Shown here: piece by piece, positions 3,421 to 22,199 of the stretch
How the letters are laid out: each line of letters begins with the position of its first letter
Numbering within the stretch: the first letter of the stretch is position 1
DNA from: Octopus sinensis
Taxonomy: Eukaryota
DNA length: 34,359 nt
Direction of reading: 5' to 3'
NCBI RefSeq assembly: GCF_006345805.1
Contig: NW_021831727.1
Span: 1 to 34,359, forward strand
Translations under genes and position numbers: made by a program
Notes under the pieces: model-generated
What the model saw: only the letters and a program-made list of their open reading frames with translations
What the model was told of the DNA's origin: nothing
Databases searched by the model: none

Positions 3421-3590
3421 TAAAAGAAACTACATCATAAAAATGCCATTTTCCAAAAAAACTGGCGAGCAATAGTCGGTAAACTGTATTTGGCAGCTAC
3501 GGCTCCACGTTCTTAGACAAATTTGAATATTAAATGAATAAATAATTTTTTCTTTTTCTATTGTTTCTTGCTGTTTATCCTCATATTCAT

Positions 3591-4704: not shown

Positions 4705-4728
4705 TGACGTCACAAAAAAGTATATAAA
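4705..4728 (+). promoter_or_regulatory. Candidate core promoter of the protocadherin-like gene
   Basis: Perfect CRE palindrome TGACGTCA (4705-4712) and TATATAAA (4721-4728), the latter starting 38 nt upstream of the ATG at 4759. Confidence 0.4.
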
Positions 4729-4758
4729 CAGAAATCGACTTAGGAAAATAATCATATA

Positions 4759-7237
4759 ATGGTTATTATCTAGATTAATAGATAGACTATACTCCTTCTA
4801 TTCCTCTCACTGTCCACGGCAACGGACCTCTCTGTCTACGAAGAAACACCCGTGGGGACATTCATTGGCAACTACTGTCTTCTCTCAAAGATTTCATGCA
4901 GATCGTACAACTCCCTCAGTTTCGACAAAAACATGTTATCTATTGACTTATCGGGGGATATTAAGGTTGTCATTTCTGAAGACTCACTGCTTAGGTGACA
5001 CAGAGAATTGACTCCGATAGCATCCCGGGAAGAATCATCAACATCAACCTCACTCTCAAAAAAGTCTCATTGGCGACTATCTACGATATTATTAAACTGA
5101 AGGTCATTGACATTAACGACAATCCCCCAAAATTCCCGAGTGCTGGACGGACTATTATGCTTCCCTCAATTTGCCCAGGATTTATTCTCCACTTACCTAA
5201 GGCTGAGGACAGAGACTTGGGGATCAACGCCATTCAACGGTATGAGCTGTTGGGAAAAGGACCTTTCTCACTCACGGAAAATAGGTCGTCCCCAGTCCTC
5301 ATATCTCACTCAGCCAACGCTCAAAAGTCGGTCAAACTGCGACTATTAGTATTTGACGATCAAAAAATCGTTTTTTGGTCATTTATGGACGTTTTTATAA
5401 CCTTTGGCGACTCCTACATAGCCACGACTCAGTTCTACGACGTGGTCCTCAGTCACTCGGCCAATAAAGGGACCCCAATACTCAATGTAGGGCCCACTAA
5501 GGACTACATACAGCACGTGTACAAATTAGAGGGGAACAAATACTCTATTGACACATATGGAACAATAATAAAGAATGATGATGAAAAAATAATCAAAGAC
5601 CAGCTAAATGTGTTAGTGGATAACACAAGAGGGCAAATTACGTCCTATCAAGTGCAGATTGAGACTGTTGAACGAAAAAACTTGTCATTAAAATGGACTA
5701 ATCAGAAAAGCAAGATTTTCAACGTGCTAAGGAACACTTCCTTTATTGCTCAGTTGTGTGTAAGCTGTCATGAAAATGATTTAAACGTGGAATGCAAAAC
5801 CAATACAAAAAGTGTCGTTCTGGTAAGAGTTAAAAGCAACGTGTTTAATCTAACTCTCGTGGATTATTCAAATGTCATTCCCAAAATATTTGTGTACGTG
5901 TATTGCACGTGGGTTGAGAATATCACAAGATATAGTACATGGTACCCACATGAGGAAACGTCGAAAGACATTGTTCAAGTTTGAATTATTTTATTCAAAT
6001 AGATATTTCCCAAAGATGACCAAGTACCTCAATTATTGGGAATTTATGAAGACATGCCTTTAGACACCGTTGCCTTGTTGGGAGTGGATAATGCGTTTGA
6101 AATAGAATTAAATGACTACTTTAATTGCCATCAAGTGTTTCGCAAAGACAATAAAGTTGGGTGCTTCGAAGTCGGCTCGCGGAAAATTTTCGACAGGGAA
6201 AAACTGGACAACCTCACTATAGGTTTTCTCTTTTGGAACGAAACGATCAATCCTTTGACAATCAGAATACTGGACTTGAATGAATATCCCCCCGTCTTCA
6301 GAAATAAAAACTGTGCCATTTCGATCAAGTTGGATACTCCGTCGGGACTTGAGTTGGCGAGAGTGTTGGCAGAAGATGAGGACATAGGACCCGACAGGGA
6401 GATATGGTATAGAATGATGTCTGTGGAGAATATGAGTGATTACAGCAATAGCCACGGCATGTTCTCCATTGATTTGAGTACTGGAAGACTGAGAACAAGC
6501 AAAAAAATAAACAGGACGGGGTATTTCCTCGTGAACCTCCGAGCTTCTGACTCAGGACCCCAGAATTGTTTGCGGATTTACACTGTCTCGTCCAAGTCGT
6601 TGATCTTTCTTCCGTTTTTGTGTATTCCTACAAAGGAAGTGTACTGGGACTATCCTCGACCATCGAATCGTCGAACATTCAAGTGGGAGATGTTTTCCTA
6701 CAAAATTCACGTTTCACATATGACTTCACTTTTTTTGTCGTTAATGACACGAATGGACATTTCCGATGTGACCCCGATTCTGGGAATGTGACTTTGGTTA
6801 AGCAAATGTCTCCCGGCGACTATTTGAAGTTGACCATCAAAGCTGTTTTCCGTCCCAATCCTTCCTTGTGGACGCTGTACTCCGTAGATTTGTTCTTACG
6901 GAATCCAATAGTGAGCGGATTGAGTGCCACTTTCGTGTCAGTTCCTGTCGTAGTTCTAATAATTTGTGTCGGGTTTGTGTGCTTGGGAGTCTATCTGTAT
7001 CGAAAGCACAGATCACCTCGAAAAATAGAGGTGAAATTTACATCTACCCTATAGCGACACACCGAGTAATTATAACTAATTATTTTTGTTATGTATAATT
7101 TATGGATTTGTAGTCCGATTATAACAGCGGTATTTGCAGGTGAGAATATCCAAAGTCGTGCTGAAAAATTGCAGGACTTTGACACATCAATCATTAATGT
7201 TGCCACTTCAAGTGTTAGTGTTAATTCTCGCTTCTAA
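4759..7237 (+). CDS. Protocadherin-like type I membrane protein (signal peptide, cadherin repeats, TM helix, short tail)
   Basis: Introns 4762-4785, 4966-4994, 5979-6002, and probably 7031-7054 and 7066-7113. Signal peptide MTILLLFLSLSTA. Cadherin motifs VYEETPVGTFIGN, DINDNPPKF, AEDRDLG, DLNEYPPVF, AEDEDIG. TM segment VSVPVVVLIICVGFVCLGVYLY. One missing base near 6556 links SDSG(T)PELF. Confidence 0.85.
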
Positions 7238-8112
7238 GTAAGAATTAACGTTTTTCGCGAACTTCTGTTTTAGAGAGCTATATGTCGACAACAAAGAAAT
7301 ACTATACTTTTTCGACGTTTAAGCTCGGAAAACCCTATATGTTTGACATAAAATTGGTTTCAGAACGACGAATCAAGAAATATAAAATAAATGACAAATC
7401 GGCAAAATATAAAAATGTCATAATTGAATGTCAGATAGTCAAAATGTAATGTAGTATTGTTAAAATTGATATAAAAAATGTAAGAATTGAATACCACATT
7501 ATCAACATTGCATATCGCGTTGTCAAATCTGATGTAAAAATGTCAAAATTGTATTCATTGAATGTTAAAAATATATCATAAATCACTTTGTTATATTTAT
7601 TTTTTAATCAAAAAACAGCTAATGAAAACACAATTAAATTGATCAAAGAAATATTTTTGCGGTCTATAACCGGCCTTAAGTTATTTTTAACCAAATTGTG
7701 AATTTTCCATTTTTAAACAAATCGAGCCCCAGTTCAATTCGGACATTACTAGCAAAATTGATTTACTCTTTTCGAAAATTATTACTTAGAATATTAGGAT
7801 AGAAGTATTTTTCATCAAAATTTCGTATGAATATATTTTGCGGTATTCTCTCAGGTCGGTTTAGATTATCGAAATTTCAGAAACACAATCTCCTTGCAAA
7901 TTAATTGTCGATTCTCTATGAAACAGAAATAAATATTGTTATCGCAGTCTTTATTTCAGATATCTGGACAATCATTGAGACATCCCCTCTGGTATTTACA
8001 CTGTTTATAAGCTACTAGGTAGAATTGTGTTTTAATTAAAATTATCTTAATTTTTAGTTACCCAATTATTAATAGAAAACATAATAAATTGTGGCACGTG
8101 TGAGTACTCTTT

Positions 8113-8640
8113 TGGGCATAACATCTCAGGACCGCTTAAAACAAGTGGAAGTTGAGAAACTTCACAAATATGATTTCCTTGCAAATGAACTATCACTACT
8201 CTACGAATGCCAAGTTAAAATTATTCCCGTGGTTCTGACCTGGGATGGTGTTGTCACAAGATGCTTCAAAAATTATATGGATAAACTATATATTGAAAAA
8301 TCTACAATGACATACATCCAATCGGTTGTGCTCAAAAGGACGCTAGAGAGCATGATAATTGAACACAAGCATGGAATGATGATAACTGGCGAGGAATATA
8401 CTTCTGCGACCGATCAACTAGTAGAAATGGCATGCCGCCAGGACATTCCATTCAAAGATAAAAGACGCACAACAACTGACGCAGAGATAGAGAATGAAGA
8501 GGAACAGCAGCAGACTCTTCTCCTAAAAGGAGAAGAGAGACTACCAATCAGGATTGAAAGTCCTAATTAAATATTTTAATCTAAATTAAATTTTGGTTTC
8601 GTAAATAAATGAATTAATTGAATAATAAGAATTTATAATG
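8113..8640 (+). mobile_element. 5'-truncated RLE-type non-LTR retrotransposon (endonuclease C-terminus plus 3' UTR)
   Basis: GITSQDRLKQVEVEKLHKYDFLANEL...IIPVVLTWDGVV is closely related to the C-terminus of the long element at 22272-23870. Homology begins abruptly near 8113. Confidence 0.85.
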
Positions 8641-8957
8641 GAAGTTATCAAAGTTTAAAACGTCAATATTTACATAAAATAAATTAATGAGGTCAAAAAT
8701 TTATTCAACTTTCTCTGATCGTGTAAATATCAGAATTATATGCTAATATCAATACGCCAAATATAAAAAAATATTAAAAAAGAAATTTTTATTAGGGCGA
8801 ACTAAGTTAAAAAAGTTAAAATTTAATAATAGTAAATAAATAATAATTTAAATGATTTTTTAACTATATTTTATTATAAATAAATGCATATTAAACAATA
8901 TTATTAGGTTAAAAAGTTAAAATTAAAATTATAAGGTTAAAATTATATGATTCTTGA

Positions 8958-9801
8958 GGATTGTGGTTATTTTGGTTCAAAGGGAATATTTTTTTGTTAA
9001 TTTCGGATGCCGCAAATTATATGAAATCAGGTAAAATTTCATTTTTAAGTTTTAGCTGGCAAAATACTTAAAAATCTGTACCCCAAGTTATTCCATGTCA
9101 CATGTACTGTTCATCTATTACACAATTGTTGTGAGAAAATAAAAACCTCCTATCCGGAAATTGATTTGATGATTGCTACTGTACAAGCAGCCATTAACAA
9201 GAACAATACAAGAAAACGAATATTTAAAGACAGAAACATCGCCATTCCACCTCGTGTGCATTTGATAAGATGGGGGAGTTGGCTTAAGGCCGCTACTTAC
9301 TATTCAGAAAATCTGATCGGAGTACAAAATATTTTCGAATCATTCGCGGATGATGGATATCTAGTTCGAACAGCCAAAGAAAGTCTTCGAAACCATGTGT
9401 TAGTGAGCAGTCTATGTGACCTTATCCGAAGCTATTCAAACATTCCAGGTTTTCGAGTAAATGTCGCTATTGCAGATATTATTACAAAATTTGAAAGTAC
9501 GCGCTTCACAATTGAACAGGCATATTATTGTTTAGAATCGTTGGAATTTGGGAATGACAACAAATTTATCAAAGAATACATAAATAAAAGGCTTAAAACA
9601 AACGATATTTCGAACATAACTAGAATGACTAATTCACAAATATCTCCTGCCGAGTATGCATTACTTCTGAATTGTCAGCCAACCTCGTGCTCGGTTGAAA
9701 GAACTTTCTCTCTAATAAAGAGTTTTCTAAGATCCAACCGAAATTTTCTACAAGAAAATGTAGAAAATTATGTAATTTGTATGTGCAACAAACAGTTTTA
9801 G
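8958..9801 (+). pseudogene. hAT-like DDE transposase, C-terminal portion, with a 25-nt intron
   Basis: LLISDAANYMKS|AGKILKNLYPKLFHVTCTVHLLH (CxxH motif), IRWGSWL and PTSCSVERTFS. The frame is open only when GT-AG 9031-9055 is removed. Confidence 0.8.
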
Positions 9802-9816
9802 TGTTTTTATTGTTTA

Positions 9817-10301
9817 CTAGCTCGGCAGCTCGCTTCGCTCACCGCGACCTAGCTCCTGCGGAGGGCCTGTTTCATCAAACAACTATAAGTTTATGTAGAT
9901 GTATAAAACTAGCTGGTTTAATGTAACCCTATTCTATCGCCTGTTGATAAACGATGTTTGTCGTCCGTCCTTCCTTGGCATATATGAATAAATTTTCTTT
10001 CTGCCTACCCTCGAGCATCCCACATACAGCTGTCCATGTGAAAAGCACTCACTCTCTAAAATAACCCAACTACCTTTAATGACTGTCCCTGGGCCTTGTT
10101 TATTGTCATTGCAAACTTTTTTTTTCATTTTTTGTGTTTATTTTTTTTTTATATTTAATTTTTTCATTTTTCCTTTGTAATTTCCTTTTTTTTCTTTTTT
10201 TATTTTTTGTTTTTACTGGCGGAAATGGGGCAGGGGAGATGCGGCAGGCGGAAATGCGGCAGGCAAGAAAGCGACACACAAAAAAGCGACACACAAAAAG
10301 A
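9817..10301 (-). mobile_element. Non-autonomous Helitron, copy 2 (485 bp)
   Basis: Minus strand runs A|TC (10301) to hairpin and CTAG|T (9817): canonical Helitron termini with an AT target. Carries the same PIF1 C-terminal fragment as copy 1. Confidence 0.9.
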
Positions 10302-10492
10302 TTTAATTAATTACCTTATTAAGCTGACCGTTTTTCTTCAGCTTCGTTTTTCCTCCTTCGGTTATCTATTTAAAAAATTATTTTTGAATAATAAAAAGTT
10401 TAGGAAAAGAGGCATACCGAAAATAAATTCTATCTTTACGAAAAACTCAAGTAAATAGTTAATATTTTTACGCAAATTCTTCTGATTGCGCT

Positions 10493-10696
10493 GTCAATTG
10501 GTGGTAAATTGTGTTAATGGTTGTGCTAATGTGGTTTCAACTATCAAAGTGTTTTTCAAAATCTGTAATTGCACACTCTATTCAAGGTCGTGCGTCAATT
10601 GGTGGTAATTTGTGTTAATGATTGTGCTAATGTGGTTTCAACTATCAAAGTGGTTTTTCAAAATCTGTTAATTGCACACTCTATTCAAAGTCGTGC
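10493..10696. repeat. Direct repeat of about 101 bp, two copies plus a partial third
   Basis: gtcaattggtggtaa...ctattcaa(g/a)gtcgtgc at 10493-10593 and 10594-10696 with few differences; partial degenerate copy to about 10730. Confidence 0.9.
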
Positions 10697-10899
10697 AATC
10701 TGTGATTGCACATTCTGTCAAAGTCAAATATGATAATAGCTTTAATTTTGATTCATGGTCGATAATGATATATGCATTTAATTTTAAGAGAAAACATAGG
10801 ATCAATTGAATTTCTTTATCGCGAATAATTGGGAGTTCATCATTGTTAATATTCTCGCTGTCGTTTTCATCAAGGATATTCTTAATACGTGAGATTTTT

Positions 10900-12530
10900 G
10901 CCTTGAAGGTTTTAATGGACCTCATCATGAATGTCGAGGACATTCGCGTTGTTCATTTTAATCAAAATGCAGAAAATAATTTTTTGATTTTTGGGGGAAA
11001 GGTTTTAAGGACTTCATCATGTAAGTCGAGGACATTGTAGTTGTTCATTTTAACCAAAATGCAGAAAATTTTTTTTTAATTTTTTTGGGGGGGAAGGTTT
11101 TAAGGACTTCATCATGTAAGTCGAGGACATTGTAGTTGTTCATTTTAACCAAAATGCAGAAAATTTTTTAATTTTTTTGGGGGGGAAGGTTTTAAGGACT
11201 TCATCATGTAAGTCGAGGACATTGTAGTTGTTCATTTAACCAAAATGCAGAAATTTTTGTTTTAATTTTTTGGGGGGGAAGGTTTTAAGGACTTCATCAT
11301 GTAAGTCGAGGACATTGTAGTTGTTCATTTTAACCAAAATGCAGAAAATTTTTTTTTAATTTTTTTGGGGGGGAAGGTTTTAAGGACTTCATCATGTAAG
11401 TCGAGGACATTGTAGTTGTTCATTTTAACCAAAATGCAGAAAATTTTTTTTTAATTTTTTGGGGGGGAAGGTTTTAAGGACTTCATCATGTAAGTCGAGG
11501 ACATTGTAGTTGTTCATTTTAACCAAAATGCAGAAAATTTTTTTAATTTTTTTTGGGGGGAAGGTTTTAAGGACTTCATCATGTAAGTCGAGGACATTGT
11601 AGTTGTTCATTTAACCAAAATGCAGAAAATTTTTTTTATTTTTTTTGGGGGGAAGGTTTTAAGGACTTCATCATGTAAGTCGAGGACATTGTAGTTGTTC
11701 ATTTTAACCAAAATGCAGAAATTTTTTTTAATTTTTTTGGGGGGGAAGGTTTTAAGGACTTCATCATGTAAGTCGAGGACATTGTAGTTGTTCATTTTAA
11801 CCAAATGCAGAAAATTTTTTTTTAATTTTTTGGGGGGGAAGGTTTTAAGGACTTCATCATGTAAGTCGAGGACATTGTAGTTGTTCATTTTAACCAAAAT
11901 GCAGAAAATTTTTTTTAATTTTTTTGGGGGGAAGGTTTTAAGGACTTCATCATGTAAGTCGAGGACATTGTAGTTGTTCATTTTAACCAAAATGCAGAAA
12001 ATTTTTTTTAATTTTTTTGGGGGGGAAGGTTTTAAGGACTTCATCATGTAAGTCGAGGACATTGTAGTTGTTAATTTTAACCAAAATGCAGAAAATTTTT
12101 TTTAATTTTTTTGGGGGGAAGGTTTTAAGGACTTCATCATGTAAGTCGAGGACATTGTAGTTGTTCATTTTAACCAAAATGCAGAAATTTTTTTTTTAAT
12201 TTTTTGGGGGGGAAGGTTTTAAGGACTTCATCATGTAAGTCGAGGACATTGTAGTTGTTCATTTTAACCAAAATGCAGAAAATTTTTTTTTAATTTTTTT
12301 TGGGGGGAAGGTTTTAAGGACTTCATCATGTAAGTCGAGGACATTGTAGTTGTTCATTTTAACCAAAATGCAGAAAATTTTTTTTTAATTTTTTGGGGGG
12401 GAAGGTTTTAAGGACTTCATCATGTAAGTCGAGGACATTGTAGTTGTTCATTTAACCAAAAGCAGAAAATTTTTTTTTAATTTTTTTGGGGGGAAGGTTT
12501 TAAGGACCTCATCATGTAAGTCGAGGACAT
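10900..12530. repeat. Tandem array of a ~93-bp unit, about 17.5 copies
   Basis: The anchor GAC(T/C)TCATCATG recurs 18 times from about 10918 to 12505 at 92-95 bp spacing. Internal differences are almost all T-, A- or G-run lengths. Confidence 0.97.
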
Positions 12531-12556
12531 CGTATTGCCAATTTGAAGTGGGTGTG

Positions 12557-12592
12557 CACACACAGACAGACAGACAGACAGACAGACACACA
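12557..12592 (+). repeat. (CA)/(CAGA)n microsatellite
   Basis: cacacacagacagacagacagacagacagacacaca, about 25 bp inside the Helitron-like 5' end at 12614. Confidence 0.9.
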
Positions 12593-12744
12593 CCATACCA
12601 TTTTATTATTAAGATTTATAAAGTTAAATTTTTGGGTTAATTTTTTTAGTTTTTAGGTTAATAAAGTTAAAGTTTTTAGGTTAAAATTTTTATTTTTCAG
12701 GTTAAAAAAAATCGCCCTAGTCATTATATAGCCTAAAATAATAG

Positions 12745-14986
12745 CCTTCTACGAACAGTGAGAATCCTGACCAAAAAAGCAAGAACGTAAAAGGTAAAAG
12801 ATACCAAAGGCACTATAAACATTAACTAATAATAGCCGATGGTTCCATGAATTACGGGACGAACTAGAAAGAACTCCTACAAGTAAAAAACTACTTATTT
12901 CATGACCAACAGCCCCAATTTTCACGACCAATACACCAAAGACCGAAAAAATGAAAAGCTCTAACCCAAATAAGCAAATTTAAAAAAATTAGTCGAAGAA
13001 TCTCAAGAAGCAGGCACCGAACAATTTCAAGGGTTTGACAAAGAAAATTTCGATTCAATCCCCTACAAGTATTTAAAATTAATTATTTAAGTAATTTGGA
13101 TTGGAATGATTCATCCAAGGACTGTTTTGTCGAAGGAACTGGTATTTATATATTTGTATGTTAGAAATGATTCTCCAACCATGTTACTACTGCAAAAAAA
13201 TTAAAGAAATGGTATTTTGACATTTTTTGTTAAAAATAGGTCCCGCCGTTGAAGTTGGGAAGACACAGTGACACAACTTTGGCACTTATGTTTTATTTGA
13301 ACACTCAAAATGAACTCCATTTGAATACAAGCATAGAATTGTAGTTTAGAGCTGTCAAAGTTGTTTAGATTTCGTAGGAATTGGAGATACAGTCAACCCT
13401 CTCTATAGTGAACCCTCTCTATAGTGAACAGGCCATATTAATGCAATCTACAATAACAAATATTAGTAATTCTCATTAATATATTTATTATAAAATGAAT
13501 ACCACGTTTAAAAATGTATAATATCATTTATTTCAATATTTTTGTGTTCACTATTAAAGAATAGTGAACGTCAAATTTTTGTGAACATAAAAATATTAAA
13601 TTTAATATTTTTACATATTAAAATGAATAAACTACACGTTCTACAGTTGTTAGCATGGTGGAAAATCGAAAACGCCTGTCATTTTTTCAAAAGAAGGAAA
13701 TAATCGAATTTTATCATAAAAATAGACATTACACACAGCGCGATTTATCTCTTTATTTTAATGTTTCTCTGGGCTGCATAAACAAAATTTTGAAAAATTC
13801 TGAAGGAATACTTAATGTTCAAGATGACCAAAAAAAGAAGAAAATTTACTTGCCCAAGTCTCAACCATTCGACAGAGATCTATTTGAATGGTTCGTTAAA
13901 AAATGATCATTTGGATTTACAATCAATGAATATCTTTTGAAGTCCATGTCTCTAAAAATGGCGAATTAATAATTTACAAGTGGAATACAAATCAAATAAA
14001 AAAGCATGGATGACATATTTCTCAGAATGGCTCATAGAATTGAACAAAAAAATGATTTTGCAAAAAAGAAAAATTCTAATTCTACTTGATAATGTGACTG
14101 TACACTCACGTGATTTAGAGTTCAGTAACATCGAACTCTTTTTTTTCCCTCCAAAACAACATCGAAGTTACAACCCCTTGATTAAGGAATAATAAAATCA
14201 TTCAAAGACAGGTATAGACAACTCCTATGTGCACACTTGATTGAATTTTATACTAATGATGACAATGTAGATCACGAAAAAGTTACGGAAAAGTTGAAGA
14301 AATTCACTCTATTGAATTGCTTGATATTCATAAATGAAGCTTGGTTAGAAGTGTCGGAATTAACAATTACAAATTATTTCAAGAAAGCATTTGAAAATGC
14401 GTTAATACAGAACCTGACAGAGTTCCGACACTATATGAAGCTAGTGAATATGCGAAGGCGCTTGAATTATGGTTTCTTGAGAATGATTATGAACAAAGAG
14501 GAAAAGTATACAAAATACAAAAAATTTTAAGAAATTATCAAACTAATCATTCTCAAAAAATCACCGATTACATGATTAAAATCTCTAAATAATCTTTGTA
14601 ATTATACTTTAATATTGTTTATTGTTATTTTGATTCCTTTTGTTCACTATAGACAATAGTGAACATGATGTTTTGACGTGGACATTTTGTTCATTATAGA
14701 GAGGGTTGACTGTACCACAAACCCAGCAAGTTTGGATAACCGGGACAAGCACAAAGACACAGGAATTGATCGCCAATAAACCGACAGAGTCGTTTACAGA
14801 AACATTTACTTACATAAATCCTAGTGAAATGAAAAAAGTATATTTTTGTGAAAAATTGTTTAGTTTAAAAAGGAATTTTTTATTAATTCGGAGACTTTGG
14901 AGTATATAATCTATTCGGATTTGTTGAAAGATAAGGGACCAACTGATGTTCATGAGGCAACTTCGGCCGCATTTAAACAATTTTAA
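12745..14986 (+). pseudogene. CNOT2: CCR4-NOT subunit 2 (NOT-box) gene, interrupted by a pogo/Tigger insertion; 5' end not found
   Basis: Introns 12794-12835, 12883-12912, 13069-13091, 13142-13164, 13212-13239, 13341-13368 and 14838-14863. With 13390-14714 removed the product reads PLKLGRHSDTTLALMFYLN...ELFRRNWRYHK(T)QQVWIT...KKFKKEFFINSETLE, matching the NOT2 domain (IKLGRY..DLLFYLYYMN...ELFNRDWRYHKEERVWIT...RKVAKEFHLEYDKLE). Three single-base homopolymer losses are needed (about 12778, 12980, 14720). Confidence 0.85.
13390..14712 (+). mobile_element. pogo/Tigger DNA transposon, both TIRs and TA target duplication intact, transposase defective
   Basis: TA|CAGTCAACCCTCTCTATAGTGAAC ... GTTCATTATAGAGAGGGTTGACTG|TA: 24-bp TIRs with one mismatch. 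ORF pieces 13655-14530 give an HTH, then KKAWMT, KILILLDNVTVH and IELFFFPP (DDE_1). Confidence 0.95.
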
Positions 14987-15244
14987 AAAATAATTTAGCT
15001 TTGAGTTTTTTTTTTTTGGCTGTAGATTAATTTTGTTTTTGTTCATTTTTTATCGTGATGTTAAGTAACAGTAATAATAATTTAGCATTTAACTATGCCT
15101 CTTTTTTATTTTGTTTTCTATTAAGTTATTAAGTATTAGACTAAATCGATTGTAAAAAATTGGTTCTTGGAACCTTCATTTAATCCTGTTCAGTTTATCT
15201 GGTGAACTAGCATTTTGTTACATTTGTTTATTAGGCTACACCCC

Positions 15245-15680
15245 CTCTCTTGTCACCTCAGTGCCGGCCGAATACCCAGACATGCGCCTTGAATGATATT
15301 GTCAAGCGTGCGCTCTACGCCGCTGGATTCCCTTCGGTCCTGGAGCCGGTTGGGTTAGACCGTGGTGACGGAAAACGTCCCGATGGGTCCACGCTATTCC
15401 CGTTCAAGGGGGAACTCGCTCTCGTTTGGGACGTCACCTGTGTCGACCCGTTTTCCTCGTCATCTCTCATCGACTCTGCCTTCCGCCCTGCTCAGCCTCT
15501 GCAAATGCCGAAACAAAAAAAATCACAAAGTATGCCTCATTGAAGAACACCTGCCTTTTCGTCCCTCTGGCTTTCGAGACGAGTGGGATAATCGGCTCAA
15601 AACCCCTGGAGTTCCTTTTGGAGACCGGCTTGATGATCTCAAGGAACTGCCTGTCTATTCGCTCGTTTTCTCAATCAAAG
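15245..15680 (+). mobile_element. CRE-like non-LTR retrotransposon 3' fragment (REL endonuclease)
   Basis: LNDIVKRAL...[16 protein letters not shown]...WDVTCVD...KITKY...FVPLAFETSG, with frameshifts. Confidence 0.85.
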
Positions 15681-15761
15681 AATTAACGCTACTTACTTGG
15701 CTAGCATCTAATTTTGTTTTTGAACTTTCTTTTAAAGGTAAAAATATTTGTTTATTCAAGG

Positions 15762-16025
15762 AGGATTCAACTGTTCTCAGTCTCAAGTTTCAAGGATTTT
15801 GAAGAATAAAGAAGAAATTATGTTATTGGCTGAATCAAATTGCACCAATTTGAGTCGCAAAAGATGACGCCATGGCAAAGAAAAGAACGTAGAAACTGCT
15901 TTGTCCGTCTGGTTTGGTCAAACCAGGGGGGAAATGTGCCAATTAATGGTCACATATTAACCCACAAAAGCTACTAGCTTTGCTAAAACTATGAAAATGG
16001 ATGACTTTATTCCCACTTCAGCCAT
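15762..16025 (+). pseudogene. pogo/Tigger transposase N-terminal fragment
   Basis: FNCSQSQVSRILKNKEEI (HTH_psq-type) and VETALSVWF...VPINGHIL...KATSFA (CENP-B-type HTH). Confidence 0.7.
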
Positions 16026-16108
16026 GTGATATAGGGATCATAAAAAGTCTAAAGCACAAGTACAGATTGACATTTTTACAGAGAGTGATTGTCATAATTG
16101 ATTCAGAC

Positions 16109-16935
16109 CAGTGATTCTCAACCGTGGTGCACCAATTTTGGTACATCAAAAATACTCGAATGGTGCATGAAAAGAAAATTGATACATGGTATTATATTTT
16201 TATTTTAGTGGAGACAAATCTAAGCCTTTTTTCATAATCTGCAAAAATAGTTCAATGAAATTGTCAAGATTAGCACACCATTTGAGAACTGAACATCCAA
16301 ATCTAGTCGAATCTTCGCATAAATATTTTCAAAAAATAAAAAAAACAAGATTGATGAACCTACTACCATTCAAAAGTTAATCACTCATCATGTTCTTGCA
16401 CAAAAAAGTATTACTTTTAACCTATTTCATAGATGGGCTACTTGCATCGTTGCGAATCGTTGCCGAATCGTTGCTAAAAATAATGCTACCCATGTTTCGG
16501 GTGAATCGTTAAAAATACCTTCTATCGCAGTTGTTTTACAAGATATGTTGGGACATAATCCATTTGAAATTTTACAAGTAGTGTGACCATTTTGATGTTC
16601 CTAGAATTTACCTTTGAGTATTCGTCGCCGAATTGATGAAATGGCTGAAAGCGTCAAAGGTTCCTAAAATATATTTAGAAAAACTGTTTTTTCCTTGCAC
16701 ATTGACGAATGTCTGGTATGTGATAATAAATCTATATTAAATGCCTATGTTAGGTAGGTATTTTAAATAATATTTTGTTTAGATTTTTGATGAACAAGTA
16801 GTTTTTGTGAAGAGGTTTTGTTTATCAGACCTTTGATAACAAATTCTACCGGAGAGTCAATTTTTAATGTATTGAAAACGTATTTTGAGGAAAAACAAAT
16901 TCCATTTTCCAATCACATGTGCTACAGACGGGGCA
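16109..16935 (+). mobile_element. hAT Buster/Charlie (ZBED5/SCAND3-like) element, left end plus degenerate transposase
   Basis: Starts CAGTGATTCTCAACC (Charlie-type TIR). Peptides SMKLSRLAHHLRTEH, RRRIDEMAE, FSLHIDEC, LFIRPLITNSTGESIF. Probable 29-nt intron at 16754-16782. Confidence 0.8.
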
Positions 16936-16959
16936 ATGGCCATAAAGATTTTTCGAAAA

Positions 16960-17340
16960 GCAAAAATCTTTATTACCTGGGAGCAACCATCAACTGTCGT
17001 GGCTCGTACGCAGATCATATATCAAATCAGAGAAAGAGGAGTGTGAGGATCCTAACAAGCTTAACCAGGTTCCATCTGGATCCGGAAACGTACATCTACG
17101 TATACAAAACGTGTGTGCAGCCAGTCCTCGCATATGGCTACGAGGGCTGGTACGGAGAAGAGTGACTACCTGATCAAACAGTTGAAAAAGACAAGACGTT
17201 TCGCTATAAAATTGGCTTACGGAGTACAACTCGACGGAAGGTTAAAAGACTCACAAGAATCCTCTGTGTCCACGATCCGGATGGTCTTGGAGAATTGTTG
17301 TCAACTACACTACAATTAGGGATACGCATGGAAAGAGACA
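16960..17340 (+). mobile_element. APE-type LINE 3' fragment (RT thumb region)
   Basis: YLGATIN...YKTCVQPVLAYG...KKTRRFAIKLAYG. Related to KTRRLALKVAF in the element at 27900-30450. Confidence 0.7.
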
Positions 17341-18503
17341 CTTCGGTGCCTTGTTTTTATCTCCTCGTTAATGATTTCTTTCTTGTTTTTCTTTTCGGTC
17401 AATAAATACAATTCTATTCTATATATTCATTGCGTATTACACCGCCATCAACTCAACTGGTTTCGGGAAAATGAAGAGGAAATAGAAAAATCGATTTCAA
17501 AAAATGAGAAATAGGATTTTTGCTAAACTTAATGAAATTCCTTGAAATTGCAGGGAAATTTTTGTAAGACTTGATTTCATCAGGAAGTCGGCAAAGATAT
17601 ATTCCATGAAGTCATGGAAGAATTTAGTAATATTGAAAATGAAATAGCGATGGATGTTGCTAATGAGGACGATGAATGTATCGGAATCATGTCCAATGAT
17701 GAAAACACAGAAAACACAAATTATAGAACAATTTGAACCAACCACCGAGAGGTAGACCACAATCTAATATGTGATAGTAACAAGTCTATTTTTTGTGACT
17801 TTGCAGTGAGCCACGAGACTTTTTCGGTGGATATATTCAGTACTCTGAGTCCCCAAAAAACAGAGAATGTGGCAGTTTGGGGTACCTTACAAAATGTCAA
17901 AAAATAAAAACTGTACGAGCTTTTCTCAAATGAAGTATAAATATATACATACTAGGAAAAAGATAAAACAAACAAAATATTTTATTCAATATGGGCAAAC
18001 TCAGACAAATAGAAAAAAACTGTCTTAGTCAAGTTGCAGTCAAAAGCTCGTCTGCGATCAAAAAATTAGAAAAAATCACCCACGATGACTCATAGGCACT
18101 ACACCAGCCGTATTCACTTCCTACTTTACAACCACTACCAAAGTGCCCAAGATGTATAATTTTTCGTAACTTTTTTCGGGAACGTGTCAGTATACAAACC
18201 ATTCCAGACAACATCCGAGTATTTTGCCTGAAATTAATATATGCAGGTCATTTTCGACAGTTGCAATAATGAAGATGGTCGTAAAAAATACTAAAAGAGA
18301 TGACTGTCATTGACAGCATGTGGGCCCCTCTTTAAAGCGTGAATAAAACGCAATGTTGGAAAGAATTTTCCAAAAAATATTATAGACATCTAATTCTATA
18401 CCATTTCAGGCTAAAAGTGGGTCTTACCAAGAGCAAAGTGGCACTTATCAATAGCAAAGTGATACAAAAAATAATTTCTGTATTTTTAAACAAAATGACT
18501 AAG

Positions 18504-19078
18504 CAACATTAAATAATACTCTTGAAGATCTGCTTGGTAGGGATCCGAAGGAGAGGCATCTCATATCCCGAGAATTATGGTCTGCTAGGAGCGACCTGTC
18601 AAGTAATCAAAATACTTATTAGATTTAACTTTCGAACAAATACTCAGGAAAGACATGAAGGAAATTCAGCCAAACCCGAACCGTTCTTCAACACAAATTG
18701 CATCAGTCCCCTTCAAACTCAATGTTGGCTTTCATTTATATTTGCTAGGACTTGATTAAAGTGGTTCCGGAATTGGATCAGGAGATTGAGAAATATTCAA
18801 AAAGCAACACTTTGGACTTTTTAATAATTCTGACTTGGTTTTTGGATGACTCAGGCTTTGAACGAGGAATAGTCGTACACCACAGTTGTTTGATGCGTAT
18901 GAATGAGGAAAGGGTGGTGATGTTTATTTTGCAGTTCGTTGACCGTCTTTGTAGTCGAATCAATCTTGGTCTGTCGATGAAATTCCCCACTTGTCTTGTT
19001 TTTAGACAAGAAGATCAGTCTAGTTCTAGAAAAGTGCTTTCTCCTATATTTTATGACATAATTCAATCTTTGAATTAA
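18504..19078 (+). CDS. PRUNE: PRUNE/PPX1-like exopolyphosphatase, C-terminal DHHA2 half only
   Basis: Introns 18603-18622 and 18724-18748 (possibly also 18480-18503 and 18914-18934). ARSDLSNLTFEQILRKDMKEI and FRQEDQSSSRKVLSP align to the PRUNE segments [21 protein letters not shown] and YHQGNTQVSRKKLLP. The DHH domain was not located. Confidence 0.65.
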
Positions 19079-19099
19079 TAAATTTCATTTTTGTAACCT

Positions 19100-20605
19100 A
19101 TTCTTAGAGGGGAGTTATGCCGACTTTCTTTTCTCCCTTTTTAATCATTTCCCGATTCATTCCCTTATTTCTTTTCTTTTTAAGCTTTTCACAGGTCCAA
19201 GATTTATTTGACGTTCCATTAATTTTGATTAAAAGAAAAATTTATGTACTATTTTAGAAAAGTTATTATATCGAAAGAGAAGAGATTGATTTGAGAAATC
19301 AATTGAGGAAGCCCGCTGCCTGTATGGAAAGCAAGTTCCCTCGGAGTATGGCTATTCCGATCCTTTGTCTTAGCCATACTCCTTCACGAGGATCATTCTT
19401 CTTTGTGGCGAGCATTCTTCCGAGTTCGCGCAAGAACTCGGCAGTCGCTGGGCCGACTGCTCCTGATGACTCAGCCGCAACAGGGGTGAATCTGTAGCGG
19501 TCCCCGAGGAAGGAATATTTTTTGGTTTTAAGGTTTTCCGCGATTGAGGCAGCTGCTCCAGGTGTCTGAACCGATTTAAGGAGATTCGTGCTTGAGTAAG
19601 TATCGACGCAAGTTGCGTCCCAGACCAAAGATCGTCCGGAGTTGAAAGGGAAAAGAGTCATCCCGTCAGGTCTCTTTCCATCACCTCGATCGAGACCCAC
19701 TGGTTCAAGCTGTGCTGGGAAGCCTGCAGCCTTCAGAGCTCTGACGATCACGTCGTTCAGAGCGGCGTGACGTGGTCCTCTTCCGGCGGATCTCCTGCAG
19801 GATAGCGGGTGCAATCCCTTCGCATCGACCGTTTTCCCGCAGCGGCATCGGTGCTCCTGGCAAACGTCTAGTCCAAGTCTTTGTCCGATTCCAATCCTCA
19901 AAGAATCGTCGTCCAAAAAAGTCCCGAGATTTGGGCAAGGGATTGCACCAAGCCATGCTCCGCTCCCTCCACTTGAGGCTGACACCAGGCAAGCAAGACG
20001 ATGTTGATTTGCTTCTTTTTTAAGCCCTTCTGAAATTTTGGAGCAGACAATGTTATCCCAGTTCCTTTGTTTCGTTGTGTCTTCGGGATTTTGAGTCCTG
20101 ACCCGTTCCAATCCCGGCAAGCTTCATCAAATGACTCATTCCAGCGAAGTCCAATAGTGTGACGAAGGACTTGCCGTGTCAAATGGTTGCAGCTTGAGAG
20201 AGACGAAAGATATGCCGGGTACGCGACCTCCAGCGCCGATCTTAGACCGACACCCCCAAATCCAGAGGGAAGCTTACATTGCTTCCAACCGAGTTCGTCG
20301 AAGCGGACGTTGATTAGTGACTCAACAGTTTGTTTGAGAGATTTGTCTATCGAAAGTAGACTGTCGTAATGTTCGTGGCAGGGTGAACTTCGCAGTAGGT
20401 ATAAAAGCTTGGGTAGTCCGATGTTGTTCTCTCATCAGGAAGAAGGATGTGTGAGAGTCGAGGCATGACAATCTTTTTGCGAGGCGAGATAATTCTTCAT
20501 TTTTAGAAAGTAGATGGTTCCTGAGTTCGTCTTCACTGAGTGGACATCCAAGGAAATATAGTTTATCGACTGGCACAGTCGGGATCCCGGGAAGCAGTTC
20601 GTTGA
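19100..20605 (-). mobile_element. CRE-like non-LTR retrotransposon, 3' part (RT end, CCHC, REL endonuclease)
   Basis: ORF 19299-20120: GAWLGAIP...LDDDSLRIGIGQRLG...CRCG...HPLSC...RHAALND...GKRPDG...WDATCVD...KTKKY. ORF 20322-20576 (LYFLGCPL) is the RT C-terminus. Confidence 0.9.
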
Positions 20606-21078
20606 AAAACTCCTGATTAAATAATTTTATCTACTACTATTGAGGTTCCACACAAATCAGCTACAAGACAGCGCATTTATAGCTCTAAATAGGTTTTGCA
20701 TTCAATTTTGCTTTGATCACATTTTCAATTCGCATTCGAATGGGTGCGACAAATCTTTCAAACTCCTGCTAGTCTGGAGCATCAGTATTTTCCTAATGAC
20801 GGGGCAATCAATAGAATATTTTCTATCGCCGAAACAACTTTAGAATGAATCTTGCACAGGAAGCCAACAACGTCGATAGATCGTTTGCAGAGAGGCAGAG
20901 AATGTGTATTGACAAGGTACTGTGACTAATGCTCCTTATTAATATTTATATCTTAACTGCCCTGTTTGCCACCTTAGAAAGTTTTTACATAATGGTAAAC
21001 TCGAACGACAAAAGAGGACTAATAAGTACTGAACAAATCGATATTAATTGATAACGAGTGATTAGTAAATAAGTCCCG

Positions 21079-22164
21079 CTAGTAAATTTGATACTTATTG
21101 TAGTATTGAACAAGCAATGTCTTCAACTCTTCTTGTCCCTGGGAGTCGAGGTTAACCAGAGGAGCCCGGACAGGTCCCCCGTAAAGTCCAATCACATCCA
21201 AGGCAAACTTATACCCGGCAGAACAAGATTTTTTGCAACCTTCAGTGACTGAGCAATAATAGAACGAGGTGATTGAGTGGAAGAAAGCTCTGCTGCAACT
21301 CAAGAGCTTCCTGGAAGGACGATGACTGGAGGAGGGAGTACAACCTGCAGGCTGATCGAGGGAGTACTCCCGCCAACGAACTGATGCAGTATTTGGCTCC
21401 TGTGGGTAAAGAAAAAAAGGGTACCTGCAACGTAGGCAGGTAGAAGAAGAGAAGCAGAGCCCATAAAGACATTAAACTCACAGTTTTTAGTTAAAGAGAC
21501 GACTTGTGATATTTTGATGATCTGAGATTATAAAATGAGACTCACATCTCCGCCGCTCTCTTTCAATCCGATTATATTTGGGTGTTGGGCCATTTCGGCA
21601 ATGATTTGTGAGTCCATATCGATGCCCGTGAATTGAGGAATGTTGTACATAATGACGGGGAGGGGCGAGGCGTCGGCCACCTGAATAAATTACAGCACTC
21701 TCACCTCGTTGAAGTACAAACGAAATGTGTCAGCATTCATTTGTGGTTTGTAGTAGTATGGGGGTTTCACCAGCACTGCATCCACCCCACAGTCCGCCAG
21801 CTGGTTTATTTGCTCGATCGTTGCCCTCGGGGCTGCAGTTATACTTAACGGATGTACTTTCATATCCAGCTCCCGAAATCAATACTTTGCTACTATTCAA
21901 AGCTTTTCTGGCAGTGCTCACCACTTGGATACGTTCGGAAGGACTCAGTAGAGGGTATTCTCCATTCGATCCGATCATGGTTATTCCATTTATGTCAGTC
22001 TCGTTCCACTTGCCAATATTCTCGGTCAGTTTTTGGGTGATGACATTGCCTTTATCGTCAAATGGGGTTGGGATAGGCGGAATAATCCCTCTTATCTTGC
22101 TTATATATCTTCGTGAAGCCATCGATGTGTGAATAATACTGCTCAGAGATCGTGCCACTCCCAT
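21079..22164 (-). CDS. HOGA1: 4-hydroxy-2-oxoglutarate aldolase (DHDPS-like family), probably mitochondrial
   Basis: Introns 21833-21857, 21681-21704, 21522-21545, 21400-21424 and 21240-21265. Motifs GIIPPIPTPF, GSNGEY, YNIPQFTG, HPNIIGLKESGGD, GLYGGPVRAPL. The N-terminus is basic with no acidic residues. One missing A near 21209 restores PGIKFALD. Confidence 0.92.
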
Positions 22165-22199
22165 TTATGGTTTGATATTAATTGAGTTCTTTTATATTA

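What the first reader, a model, noticed from the sequence alone, without database searches (positions are those of the whole stretch)
13369..14740. Core deadenylase subunit CNOT2 split inside its WRYHK motif by a pogo/Tigger element
Removing 13390-14714 rejoins AGA TA|C CAC AAA (R-Y-H-K) in the most conserved part of the NOT-box. CNOT2 is a core CCR4-NOT subunit, so this locus may be a dead duplicate, one disrupted allele, a real loss of the subunit in a reduced parasite, or a locus repaired by excision or splicing. Apart from the insertion and homopolymer slips the coding sequence has no stops, so the disruption looks recent.
Basis: partly seen in the sequence, partly recalled or inferred. 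Interest (0 to 1): 0.7.

Follow-up and report, generated by a model that had tools for sequence, protein, structure and literature searches.

The report
Transposon insertion splitting a CNOT2 gene
A dead 1.3-kb pogo/Tigger-type "cut-and-paste" transposon sits inside the last conserved domain of the CNOT2 gene of a tiny-intron animal parasite. The gene is otherwise intact, so this looks like a young, ordinary knock-out allele, not proof that the animal has lost CNOT2.

Summary
Window 13390-14712 is a 1323-bp element with 24-nt terminal inverted repeats (23/24) and a TA target-site duplication. It carries a decayed CENP-B-like HTH and a DDE_1 transposase, so it is a non-autonomous pogo/Tigger element. 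Joining the flanks restores ...FRRNWRY|HK..., and the flanks encode a CNOT2/Not2 NOT-box (Pfam 47 bits; human CNOT2 E 1.6e-12).

The gene has five canonical 23-28-nt introns, no stop codons, and ends where human CNOT2 ends. A single -1 frameshift lies in a CCC run 8 nt past the insertion. Two neighbouring, clearly conserved genes (HOGA1-like, cadherin) each carry the same kind of -1 homopolymer error, so this frameshift is probably an assembly artefact.

The transposon is therefore the only real lesion, and it is young. The allele would translate as ...NWRY-SQPSL-stop and lose the beta-sheet half of the NOT-box.

I could not decide between a haplotype-specific allele (favoured), a dead duplicate, or a true loss. 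The source organism is absent from every searchable collection. Tiny introns, 36% GC and a heavy repeat load fit a dicyemid such as Dicyema japonicum.

Interest is modest. A speculative link to dicyemid somatic DNA elimination cannot be excluded.

The parts
12951..13068 (+). Putative first coding exon of CNOT2. ATG at 12951; the frame that continues into the NOT-box is open from 12974 to 13068 (ANLKKLVEESQEAGTEQFQGFDKENFDSIPY). Joining the ATG to it needs one extra base in the A3/T3 runs at 12976-12981.
   Evidence: Three-frame translation and coordinates. No homology support: the PDB alignment starts further downstream. Inference only.
13069..13091 (+). Mini-intron 1, 23 nt, GTATTT...TTAAG
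   Evidence: Its removal keeps the frame.
13092..13141 (+). CNOT2 exon (NLDWNDSSKDCFVEGT)
13142..13164 (+). Mini-intron 2, 23 nt, GTATTT...GTTAG
13165..13211 (+). CNOT2 exon (EMILQPCYYCKKIKEM), start of the Pfam NOT2_3_5_C match
13212..13239 (+). Mini-intron 3, 28 nt, GTATTT...AATAG
13240..13340 (+). CNOT2 exon (VPPLKLGRHSDTTLALMFYLNTQNELHLNTSIE), the helical part of the NOT-box
   Evidence: Aligned to human CNOT2 KLGRYGEDLLFYLYYMNGGDVLQLLAAVE
13341..13368 (+). Mini-intron 4, 28 nt, GTAGTT...TTTAG
13369..13389 (+). 5' part of the split exon (L)FRRNWR + TA of the Tyr codon. TA 13388-13389 is the left copy of the target-site duplication.
13390..14712 (+). Non-autonomous pogo/Tigger-type DNA transposon, 1323 bp, transposase remnant in the same orientation as CNOT2
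   Evidence: TIRs and TA duplication. DDE_1 at 92.9 bits over profile positions 45-177/177 after stitching one frameshift and one stop. N-terminus aligns to the CENP-B DNA-binding domain 1hlv, E 9e-4. Best database relatives are Tigger-named proteins at 41-46% identity.
13390..13413 (+). Left terminal inverted repeat CAGTCAACCCTCTCTATAGTGAAC. Its inner 16 nt are tandemly duplicated up to 13429.
13655..13906 (+). Transposase remnant, N-terminal CENP-B-like helix-turn-helix (83-aa ORF; the similarity continues past a stop to about 13970)
13956..14530 (+). Transposase remnant, DDE_1 core from the second Asp (LLDN) to the third (QPLD) plus the C-terminal part. It has a frameshift in the T8/C3 run near 14140-14150 and a TAA in place of Gln after QPLD. 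The first-Asp region and the Tc5 HTH are deleted.
14689..14712 (-). Right terminal inverted repeat (one mismatch to the left one)
14713..14714 (+). Right copy of the TA target-site duplication
14715..14837 (+). 3' part of the split exon: C of the Tyr codon, HK, then (P)QQVWITGTSTKTQELIANKPTESFTETFTYINPSEMKK. A -1 frameshift lies in the CCC run at 14722-14724.
14838..14863 (+). Mini-intron 5, 26 nt, GTATAT...TTTAG
14864..14986 (+). Last CNOT2 exon (FKKEFFINSETLEY...AAFKQF) with stop TAA at 14984-14986

Best explanation
This is a young insertion allele. A non-autonomous, internally deleted pogo/Tigger-type DNA transposon was mobilised in trans by a transposase encoded elsewhere. It integrated at a TA dinucleotide inside the Tyr codon of the WRYHK motif of an otherwise intact, intron-containing CNOT2/Not2 gene, and it duplicated the TA.

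On this haplotype, translation would read ...FRRNWRY-SQPSL-stop. That keeps the three N-terminal helices of the NOT-box but loses the whole C-terminal Sm-like beta-sheet (about 85 residues). The product could not form a proper NOT module with CNOT1 and CNOT3, so the allele is null.

The extra -1 frameshift 8 nt downstream is most likely a homopolymer under-call of the long-read assembly and not a mutation.

The rest of the gene shows no decay, and CNOT2 is needed for CCR4-NOT integrity. So the most likely situation is that a working copy still exists in the animal. That copy is probably the other haplotype of a highly heterozygous, pooled, partly clonal sample collapsed into a haploid assembly.

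Shown: the element's anatomy, the gene's identity, the exact split, intact introns and frame, and the same type of error in neighbouring genes. Inferred: mobilisation in trans, null function, allelic status, and the organism (dicyemid-like).
For: - Element: TIR 23/24 and TA duplication, 0 matches expected by chance.
- Transposase remnant: DDE_1 at 92.9 bits but only profile positions 45-177, with a stop and a frameshift. CENP-B-like N-terminus. Tigger-named relatives at 41-46% identity, and a related Logan element with an 18/24-identical TIR and a TA duplication.
- Gene identity: Pfam NOT2_3_5_C 47.1 bits; human CNOT2 E 1.6e-12; yeast Not2 E 6e-7; about 32% identity, gapless across the junction.
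- Gene integrity: five canonical GT..AG mini-introns, no stops, and a stop at the human C-terminal position.
- Read-through stops after 5 codons.
- Frameshift as artefact: the HOGA1-like gene (human HOGA1 E 6e-64) needs A7 where the assembly has A6 at 21229-21234, which gives a gapless 285-residue alignment. The cadherin gene needs C5 where the assembly has C4 at 6558-6561, which completes the Pfam Cadherin match to 92/93.
- NOT-box architecture, and the loss of complex stability and deadenylase activity on CNOT2 depletion: PMC4032980.
- If the source is Dicyema japonicum: 1.24% heterozygosity, merged Illumina and PacBio RS II assemblies, HaploMerger collapse, 49% repeats, 36.7% GC (PMC6736024).
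Against: - No read, transcript or second-locus data could be obtained, so allelic status is untested.
- The 5' end of the gene is not established. There is no homology support upstream of 13165, the start codon needs a further 1-nt correction, and a 1.6-kb satellite begins about 400 bp upstream. The locus could therefore be a 5'-truncated duplicate.
- The frameshift at 14722-14724 could be a real mutation; a CCC run is short for a homopolymer error.
- The organism is not identified with certainty.
Confidence: 0.5

Rival explanations
1. Dead duplicate. This locus is a recently duplicated, perhaps 5'-truncated, copy of CNOT2 lying in repeat-rich DNA. It was free to take a transposon hit, and an intact paralogue elsewhere does the work.
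For: The locus is hemmed in by a 93-bp satellite (10905-12534) and by transposon debris, including Helitron-like helicase fragments at 1-243 and 9937-10137. No homology-supported N-terminal exon or clean start codon was found. There is an extra frameshift at 14722-14724.
Against: All five introns keep GT..AG, and there is no stop in about 190 codons of 30%-GC sequence, so any duplication would have to be very recent. The frameshift looks like the assembly errors seen in neighbouring functional genes. Apparently functional genes (cadherin, HOGA1-like, HEAT-repeat protein) lie in the same 34 kb, so this is not a gene graveyard. A 194-codon reading, the size of yeast Not2 (191 aa in 4by6_B), is possible with one more 1-nt correction.
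Confidence: 0.2
2. Real, fixed loss of CNOT2 in a reduced parasite, caught shortly after the inactivating insertion.
For: Tiny-intron parasites (dicyemids, myxobolid myxozoans) have lost many conserved genes (PMC6736024, PMC13644364). The insertion truncates the protein inside its key domain.
Against: The coding frame, splice sites and about 32% identity to human show purifying selection until very recently. Fixing a null in a subunit whose depletion destabilises the whole CCR4-NOT complex (PMC4032980) is unlikely a priori. Seeing a fixed loss this fresh needs a lucky time window.
Confidence: 0.1
3. Rescue at the DNA level. The transposon is present in germline or some nuclei and is excised precisely at its TA boundaries in the cells that express CNOT2. 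This would resemble ciliate internal eliminated sequences, or frequent somatic Tc1/mariner excision.
For: The ends read TA|CAGTCA...TGACTG|TA, and removing the element plus one TA restores the codon exactly. This is the geometry of TA-bounded eliminated sequences in Paramecium (my own knowledge). Dicyemids are reported to undergo chromatin elimination and to make extrachromosomal circular DNA in somatic cells (PMC6543705 citing Noto et al. 2003).
Against: There is no direct evidence. Classical Tc1/pogo excision leaves footprints and is not precise. The three other genes in the window carry no such insert in their exons. DNA from whole animals is mostly somatic, so a germline-limited insert should be under-represented in the assembly. 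The organism's identity is itself an inference.
Confidence: 0.03
4. Rescue at the RNA level. The element is removed from the pre-mRNA through cryptic splice sites, as for Tc1 in C. elegans or Ds/dSpm in maize, giving a slightly altered CNOT2.
For: A cryptic donor at 13392 (CA|GTCAAC) joined to an acceptor after 14730 (GCAAG|TT) would be in frame. It gives WRY-I-WIT and deletes HKPQQV (reading).
Against: Exact removal is impossible: no GT..AG at any of the three equivalent boundaries. The cryptic product lacks H and K of the invariant motif. The 19 introns traced in this window are 21-35 nt and start GTA, GTG or GTT, so a 1.3-kb intron with a GTC donor would be very atypical for this spliceosome.
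Confidence: 0.03
5. Assembly artefact. The insertion comes from a chimeric long read, or from a rare somatic insertion promoted into the consensus.
For: The assembly in this region clearly carries uncorrected indel errors.
Against: A perfect TA duplication and complete TIRs at both junctions are the signature of real transposition and not of mis-joining.
Confidence: 0.04

Closest known systems
CNOT2 / Not2 (Cdc36) NOT-box subunit of the CCR4-NOT complex (human 4C0D, 4C0F, 5FU6; yeast 4BY6)
   Same: Pfam NOT2_3_5_C above threshold. Gapless alignment of about 100 residues to human CNOT2, including KLGR, ELF.R.WRYHK..VWIT and the KEF...LE tail. The stop is at the same C-terminal position. Only CNOT2/Not2 chains were hit, not CNOT3/Not5.
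   Different: About 32% identity, so very divergent. The conceptual protein is only about 194 aa, which is yeast-like; human is 540 aa. The NOT1-anchor region is not recognisable. The frame is interrupted by the transposon and by one frameshift.
pogo/Tigger group of Tc1/mariner-type DNA transposons (Drosophila pogo, human Tigger, CENP-B and jerky relatives; Pfam DDE_1 + HTH_Tnp_Tc5 + CENP-B_N)
   Same: TA target-site duplication, 24-nt TIRs starting CAGT, DDE_1 core with LLDN and QPLD Asp motifs about 30 residues apart, CENP-B-like N-terminal HTH. Nearest database proteins are annotated as Tigger-derived.
   Different: It is a deletion derivative. It lacks the Tc5 HTH and DDE_1 profile positions 1-44, which include the first catalytic Asp, and it has a stop and a frameshift. 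No relative is closer than 46% identity, so it belongs to an uncatalogued family. The nearest element with readable ends (Logan SRR31540189, L001) shares 18/24 TIR positions.
Transposon-insertion alleles of Not2 in model organisms, e.g. the P-element allele that defined Drosophila Regena (Rga = NOT2) (recalled from memory, not checked here)
   Same: A mobile element interrupts the NOT2 gene and produces a loss-of-function allele that is carried heterozygously.
   Different: Those are laboratory alleles of known zygosity. Here the zygosity and the phenotype are unknown.
Removal of Tc1 from C. elegans pre-mRNAs by cryptic splicing, and maize Ds/dSpm acting as introns (recalled from memory)
   Same: A Tc1/mariner-superfamily element in a coding exon, with cryptic GT and AG sites near its ends that could give an in-frame product.
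   Different: Not tested. This organism's introns are 21-35 nt, and the only in-frame cryptic product deletes invariant residues.
TA-bounded internal eliminated sequences of Paramecium, thought to descend from Tc1/mariner elements (recalled from memory)
   Same: TA at both boundaries, ends reading TACAGT..., and removal of the element plus one TA restores the reading frame.
   Different: No evidence of developmental excision. It is a single case in 34 kb. The element is a recognisable, recent transposon and not a short degenerate eliminated sequence.

Membership tests
CNOT2/Not2 (NOT-box protein) | NOT2_3_5_C domain above Pfam's gathering score | tested here: met
   47.1 bits against a cut-off of 27, profile positions 20-125/126, on the flanks joined after intron removal
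CNOT2/Not2 (NOT-box protein) | Closer to CNOT2/Not2 than to the paralogous CNOT3/Not5 NOT-box | tested here: met
   The PDB search hit human CNOT2 (E 1.6e-12) and yeast Not2 (E 6e-7). No CNOT3/Not5 chain was hit at E<=1, although they are in the same entries.
CNOT2/Not2 (NOT-box protein) | Uninterrupted reading frame through the NOT-box | tested here: not met
   1323-bp insertion in the Tyr codon of WRYHK, plus a -1 frameshift at 14722-14724 that is probably an assembly error
CNOT2/Not2 (NOT-box protein) | N-terminal NOT1-anchor / connector region and a start codon | tested here: inconclusive
   The frame is open at 12974-13068 and an ATG lies at 12951, one base out of frame. No alignment to human or yeast upstream of the NOT-box.
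CNOT2/Not2 (NOT-box protein) | Assembly with CNOT1 and CNOT3 into the NOT module | not testable with these tools
   Needs the partner genes and biochemistry.
pogo/Tigger DNA transposon | TA target-site duplication | tested here: met
   TA at 13388-13389 and 14713-14714
pogo/Tigger DNA transposon | Short terminal inverted repeats | tested here: met
   24 nt, 23/24 complementary, 0 expected by chance
pogo/Tigger DNA transposon | DDE_1-type transposase core | tested here: met
   PF03184 at 92.9 bits, E 2.3e-26, profile positions 45-177/177. Invariant KRKIL..DN..H and LQPLD.GII..FK shared with Tigger-named proteins.
pogo/Tigger DNA transposon | CENP-B-like N-terminal DNA-binding HTH | tested here: inconclusive
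   Aligns to CENP-B 1hlv over residues 4-104 at E 9e-4, 22 bits, but no Pfam HTH family reached E<=1. The Tc5 HTH is deleted.
pogo/Tigger DNA transposon | Complete catalytic triad and open frame (autonomy) | tested here: not met
   The first-Asp region (profile 1-44) is absent, and there is one stop and one frameshift. The element is non-autonomous.
Processed (retro-) pseudogene | Loss of introns | tested here: not met
   Five mini-introns are retained with GT..AG.
Programmed-elimination sequence (ciliate-type TA-bounded eliminated sequence) | TA boundaries whose removal restores the coding frame | tested here: met
   This is also true of any fresh Tc1/pogo insertion, so it does not discriminate.
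Programmed-elimination sequence (ciliate-type TA-bounded eliminated sequence) | Many such inserts in coding exons of the same genome | tested here: not met
   The HOGA1-like, cadherin and HEAT-repeat genes in the window have none.
Programmed-elimination sequence (ciliate-type TA-bounded eliminated sequence) | Developmentally regulated precise excision | not testable with these tools
   Needs germline versus somatic DNA.

The most novel reading that the evidence does not exclude
The window comes from a dicyemid. The transposon is a germline-resident, TA-bounded insert in an essential gene that is removed precisely during the somatic chromatin elimination and circular-DNA formation reported for these animals. 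That would make it an animal counterpart of ciliate internal eliminated sequences.
Probability: 0.03. Interest if true: 0.85.

Novelty: new member of a known kind. Interest (0 to 1): 0.3.

Why it matters
If this is simply a young insertion allele, it has three practical consequences:
- The pogo/Tigger family was active recently in this genome.
- The assembly carries homopolymer errors that will break gene models. Three of the three genes I checked closely are affected.
- An automatic annotation would wrongly score CNOT2 as absent or as a pseudogene in a "reduced" parasite, inflating gene-loss lists.

It would matter more if reads showed the insert to be fixed with no second copy. That would be an animal living without the NOT2 subunit.

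It would matter most if the insert were removed from somatic DNA. That would give the long-described but molecularly uncharacterised DNA elimination of dicyemids a concrete, testable substrate.

Tried and rejected
**Searches that found nothing**
- Homology searches with the conceptual CNOT2 and with the 329-aa cadherin ORF found nothing. The organism and its close relatives are absent from the 5.8-billion-protein collection, so "no second copy found" carries no weight.
- Exact look-ups of two window ORFs in public assemblies found nothing.
I did not try to get round this.
- The one job of that kind was used instead on HOGA1 exon 1 to find the organism. The best hit was 52% identical. The named hits were HOGA1 from an ostracod and fishes, which gives no taxonomic resolution.
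- Scans of JGI metagenome contigs for the empty site and for the TIR, and of GTDB genomes for the TIR, gave zero hits.
- Rfam and tRNA scans found nothing.

**Readings I rejected**
- An intron as the explanation of the CNOT2 frameshift. Only 8 nt separate the K and V codons.
- A 29-nt GT..AG intron as the explanation of the cadherin frame change. It truncates the Pfam match at 80/93 (41.7 bits). Adding one C gives 92/93 (46.4 bits).
- A 16-nt non-canonical or a 58-nt intron in HOGA1. The first needs GT..CA and a 3-residue gap. The second deletes the conserved G-x-K segment. A canonical 26-nt intron plus A7 scores best, at 219.5 against 214.5 bits.
- Exact splicing of the transposon, because there is no GT..AG at any equivalent boundary.
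- A processed pseudogene, because the introns are retained.

**Other checks**
- A second copy of the element in the window: none. The other pogo-like fragments (1038-1237 on the minus strand, about 15750-16110) are unrelated at the DNA level and only about 40% identical over 25 aa.
Full report
**1. The observation**

The sequence at 13381-13430 reads ...TTGGAGA TA|CAGTCAACCCTCTCTATAGTGAAC.... At 14689-14725 it reads ...GTTCATTATAGAGAGGGTTGACTG|TA|CCACAAACCCAG....

The repeat finder pairs the two ends. A pattern search finds the 24-nt terminus only at these two places: 0 and 1 mismatch, plus an internal tandem half-copy. None is expected in 100 shuffles.

The element proper is therefore 13390-14712 (1323 bp). 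It is flanked by a duplicated TA at 13388-13389 and 14713-14714. Its removal gives AGA TAC CAC AAA, that is R-Y-H-K.

**2. The interrupted gene**

Translating the flanks shows short coding blocks in changing frames, separated by 23-28-nt stretches that all begin GTA and end AG:
- 13069-13091 (23 nt)
- 13142-13164 (23 nt)
- 13212-13239 (28 nt)
- 13341-13368 (28 nt)
- 14838-14863 (26 nt)

Removing these stretches and the element gives a continuous reading ...NLDWNDSSKDCFVEGTEMILQPCYYCKKIKEMVPPLKLGRHSDTTLALMFYLNTQNELHLNTSIELFRRNWRYHK / QQVWITGTSTKTQELIANKPTESFTETFTYINPSEMKKFKKEFFINSETLEY...AAFKQF-stop.

This reading matches Pfam NOT2_3_5_C at 47.1 bits (cut-off 27). It also matches the NOT-box of human CNOT2 (5fu6_B, 4c0d_B, 4c0f_A; E about 2e-12) and yeast Not2 (4by6_B, E 6e-7). 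No CNOT3/Not5 chain was hit. The alignment is gapless across the insertion site, about 32% identical, and the stop (TAA at 14984-14986) lies where human CNOT2 ends.

The gene is therefore a CNOT2/Not2 orthologue or a very recent copy of one. CNOT2 is a non-catalytic core subunit of the complex. Its NOT-box has three helices followed by an Sm-like beta-sheet and pairs with the NOT-box of CNOT3. Depleting CNOT2 destabilises the complex and inhibits its deadenylase activity (PMC4032980).

**3. The element**

Three-frame translation shows three features:
- An N-terminal 83-aa ORF whose similarity continues past a stop. It aligns over about 100 residues with the DNA-binding domain of CENP-B (1hlv, E 9e-4).
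- An internal deletion after that ORF.
- A DDE_1 core running from ...KRKILILLDN... to ...LQPLD(stop)GIIKSFKDRYR....

Stitched across one frameshift and one stop, the core scores 92.9 bits (E 2.3e-26). It covers only profile positions 45-177 of 177. The region with the first catalytic Asp and the Tc5 helix-turn-helix are gone, so the element cannot move itself.

The best relatives in 5.8 billion proteins are only 41-46% identical. They include [quoted passage not shown]. The best hit lies on a Logan contig (L001). Its element ends CAGTCAAACCTGTCTATCTCGAAT followed by TA, which is 18/24 like the window's terminus.

The TA duplication, the CAGT termini, the DDE_1 core and the CENP-B-like N-terminus together place it in the pogo/Tigger group, as a deletion derivative of an undescribed family.

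**4. The "homopolymer slip"**

After the element is removed, one defect remains. Between the K codon (ending at 14721) and GTT TGG ATA (VWI) there are 8 nt (CCCAGCAA) where 9 are needed. Human CNOT2 has three residues at this point. One more C in the run at 14722-14724 gives HK-PQQ-VWIT, and no intron can fit there.

To judge whether this is biology or assembly, I reconstructed the neighbouring genes.

*HOGA1-like gene (minus strand, 22164 to 21079).*
- It has four clean 24-25-nt introns and matches human HOGA1 along its whole length.
- At the fifth junction, the only reading with a canonical intron (26 nt, 21265-21240) needs A7 where the assembly has A6 (21229-21234).
- That reading aligns without a gap over 285 residues (219.5 bits, E 6e-64). 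The non-canonical 16-nt alternative scores 214.5 bits with a gap.

*Cadherin gene (about 4790-7054).*
- Its introns lie at 4995-5020 and 5979-6002.
- It changes frame at a C4 run (6558-6561). Adding one C completes the Pfam Cadherin match to position 92/93 (46.4 bits).
- An alternative 29-nt intron cuts the match at 80/93 (41.7 bits).

Two otherwise well-conserved genes within 10 kb therefore show the same -1 homopolymer defect. That is about one per 1.2 kb of coding sequence. This is what an imperfectly polished long-read consensus looks like.

I conclude, by inference, that the CNOT2 frameshift is probably an artefact (about 70%). That leaves the transposon as the only real lesion.

**5. Completeness of the gene**

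- Upstream of 13092, the frame that continues into the NOT-box is open from 12974.
- An ATG at 12951 is one base out of frame. One extra base in the A3/T3 runs at 12976-12981 would join them and give about 194 codons.
- Yeast Not2 is 191 residues in 4by6_B.
- There is no homology support for this part, and a 93-bp satellite of 17 copies starts about 400 bp upstream (10905-12534).
- The 5' end is therefore unresolved, and a truncated duplicate cannot be excluded.

**6. The organism**

*Evidence from the window itself*
- I traced 19 introns in four genes; all are 21-35 nt.
- The standard code is in use: TAA and TAG act as stops.
- A cadherin, HOGA1 and a HEAT-repeat protein are present.
- GC is about 36%.
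- The window is crowded with LINE-like, pogo and other repeats.

*What the literature says*
- Among animals, such introns are reported only in Dicyema japonicum and in myxobolid myxozoans (PMC13644364).
- D. japonicum has 36.7% GC, 48.9% repeats with many LINE copies, 1.24% heterozygosity and merged Illumina and PacBio RS II assemblies collapsed with HaploMerger (PMC6736024).
- The myxozoan Henneguya has 29% GC, and myxozoans are described as having relatively few transposable elements, though content varies among species.

A dicyemid is the better fit (my estimate about 65%). No search could confirm it. Every query found either nothing or only distant relatives.

**7. What the insertion does**

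On this haplotype the reading continues ...FRRNWRY SQPSL stop stop. The helices of the NOT-box are kept, but the whole beta-sheet half is lost. That is a null allele.

Exact removal by splicing is impossible. None of the three equivalent 1325-nt intervals begins GT and ends AG. One cryptic combination (donor at 13392, acceptor after 14730) is in frame, but it deletes H and K of the invariant motif and needs a 1.3-kb intron in an organism whose introns are about 25 nt.

**8. Which biological situation**

The gene shows no decay apart from the insertion, so the event is young.

I favour (0.5) a haplotype-specific or polymorphic insertion captured by a collapsed haploid assembly, with the other allele intact. 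This is easy to imagine in a heterozygous, pooled and partly clonal sample.

The alternatives are:
- a recently dead duplicate (0.2)
- a fixed fresh loss (0.1)
- an assembly artefact (0.04)
- rescue through cryptic splicing (0.03)
- precise somatic excision (0.03)

The last is the only truly novel reading. It draws on reports of chromatin elimination and circular DNA formation in dicyemid somatic cells (PMC6543705) and on the TA|CAGT...ACTG|TA geometry. Any fresh pogo insertion has that geometry, however, and no other gene in the window carries such an insert.

**9. Verdict**

The phenomenon, a non-autonomous DNA transposon knocking out a gene, is a known kind. The instance is new, and so is the element family.

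Interest is modest (0.3) unless reads show fixation without a second copy, or tissue-specific excision.

A practical by-product is that this assembly region carries homopolymer under-calls that will break gene models.

Noticed in passing
window 21079-22164 (minus strand): An HOGA1-like gene (4-hydroxy-2-oxoglutarate aldolase; human 3s5o E 6e-64) with five 24-26-nt introns. It needs one extra A in the A6 run at 21229-21234 to stay in frame, which is probably an assembly under-call.
   Followed up: yes
window ~4790-7054 (+): A cadherin-repeat membrane protein gene with 26- and 24-nt introns (4995-5020, 5979-6002) and a -1 frameshift in the C4 run at 6558-6561. It is extremely divergent: the 329-aa ORF 4995-5984 found no homologue among 578 candidates.
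   Followed up: yes
window 10905-12534: A tandem satellite of 93-bp units, 17.4 copies, 95% matches, with a 187-bp higher-order period. It ends about 400 bp upstream of the putative CNOT2 start. A short 21/44-nt repeat follows at 12618-12709.
   Followed up: partly
window 32503-34359 (minus strand, cut by the window end): A HEAT-repeat protein gene (Pfam HEAT 24.1 bits; it looks like a PP2A/PP4 regulatory-subunit type) with many 21-35-nt introns. At two junctions an apparent frameshift disappeared when a different AG acceptor was chosen, so frameshift calls in this genome need care.
   Followed up: partly
window 22275-25700 (minus) and 8088-8567 (+): A non-LTR retrotransposon-like element with a long ORF (532 aa at 22272-23870) and an RT-like block at 23935-24381. 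A C-terminal fragment of the same family lies at 8088-8567. Pfam gave no significant hit to the 532-aa ORF.
   Followed up: partly
window 27600-30300 (minus): A second reverse-transcriptase-like element (motifs at 28496-28946), broken into several frames.
   Followed up: no
window 1-243 (+) and 9937-10137 (minus): Two fragments encoding nearly the same Pif1/Helitron-helicase-like C-terminus (...ESECFSHGQLYVGCSRV...). This is recognised from the motif only and was not tested.
   Followed up: no
window 1038-1237 (minus) and ~15750-16110 (+): Two further pogo/Tc5-type transposase fragments (HTH_Tnp_Tc5 E 7e-8 for the first). They are not the same family as the element in CNOT2.
   Followed up: partly
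window 15235-15540 (+) and 19302-20123 (minus): Two copies of an unknown repeat family sharing ...[24 protein letters not shown]...VWD.TCVD.... The 273-aa ORF has no Pfam hit.
   Followed up: no
window 9166-9801 (+), 31342-31858 (+): ORFs with hAT-dimerisation-like C-terminal motifs (..SCSVERTFS..). Pfam did not support this for 9166-9801.
   Followed up: partly
L001 (Logan SRR31540189 contig) 1400-1580; L002 (Octopus sinensis VCDQ01007429.1): The nearest relatives of the transposase are a Logan element with TIR CAGTCAAACCTGTCTATCTCGAAT plus TA and similar subterminal repeats, and a Tigger-7-like gene annotated in Octopus sinensis (44% identity). Octopuses host dicyemids, but the identity is far too low to argue for transfer or contamination.
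   Followed up: partly
window 1-18000 versus 19000-30000: GC shifts from about 29-34% to about 38-46%. The shift coincides with the retroelements and the HOGA1-like gene.
   Followed up: no
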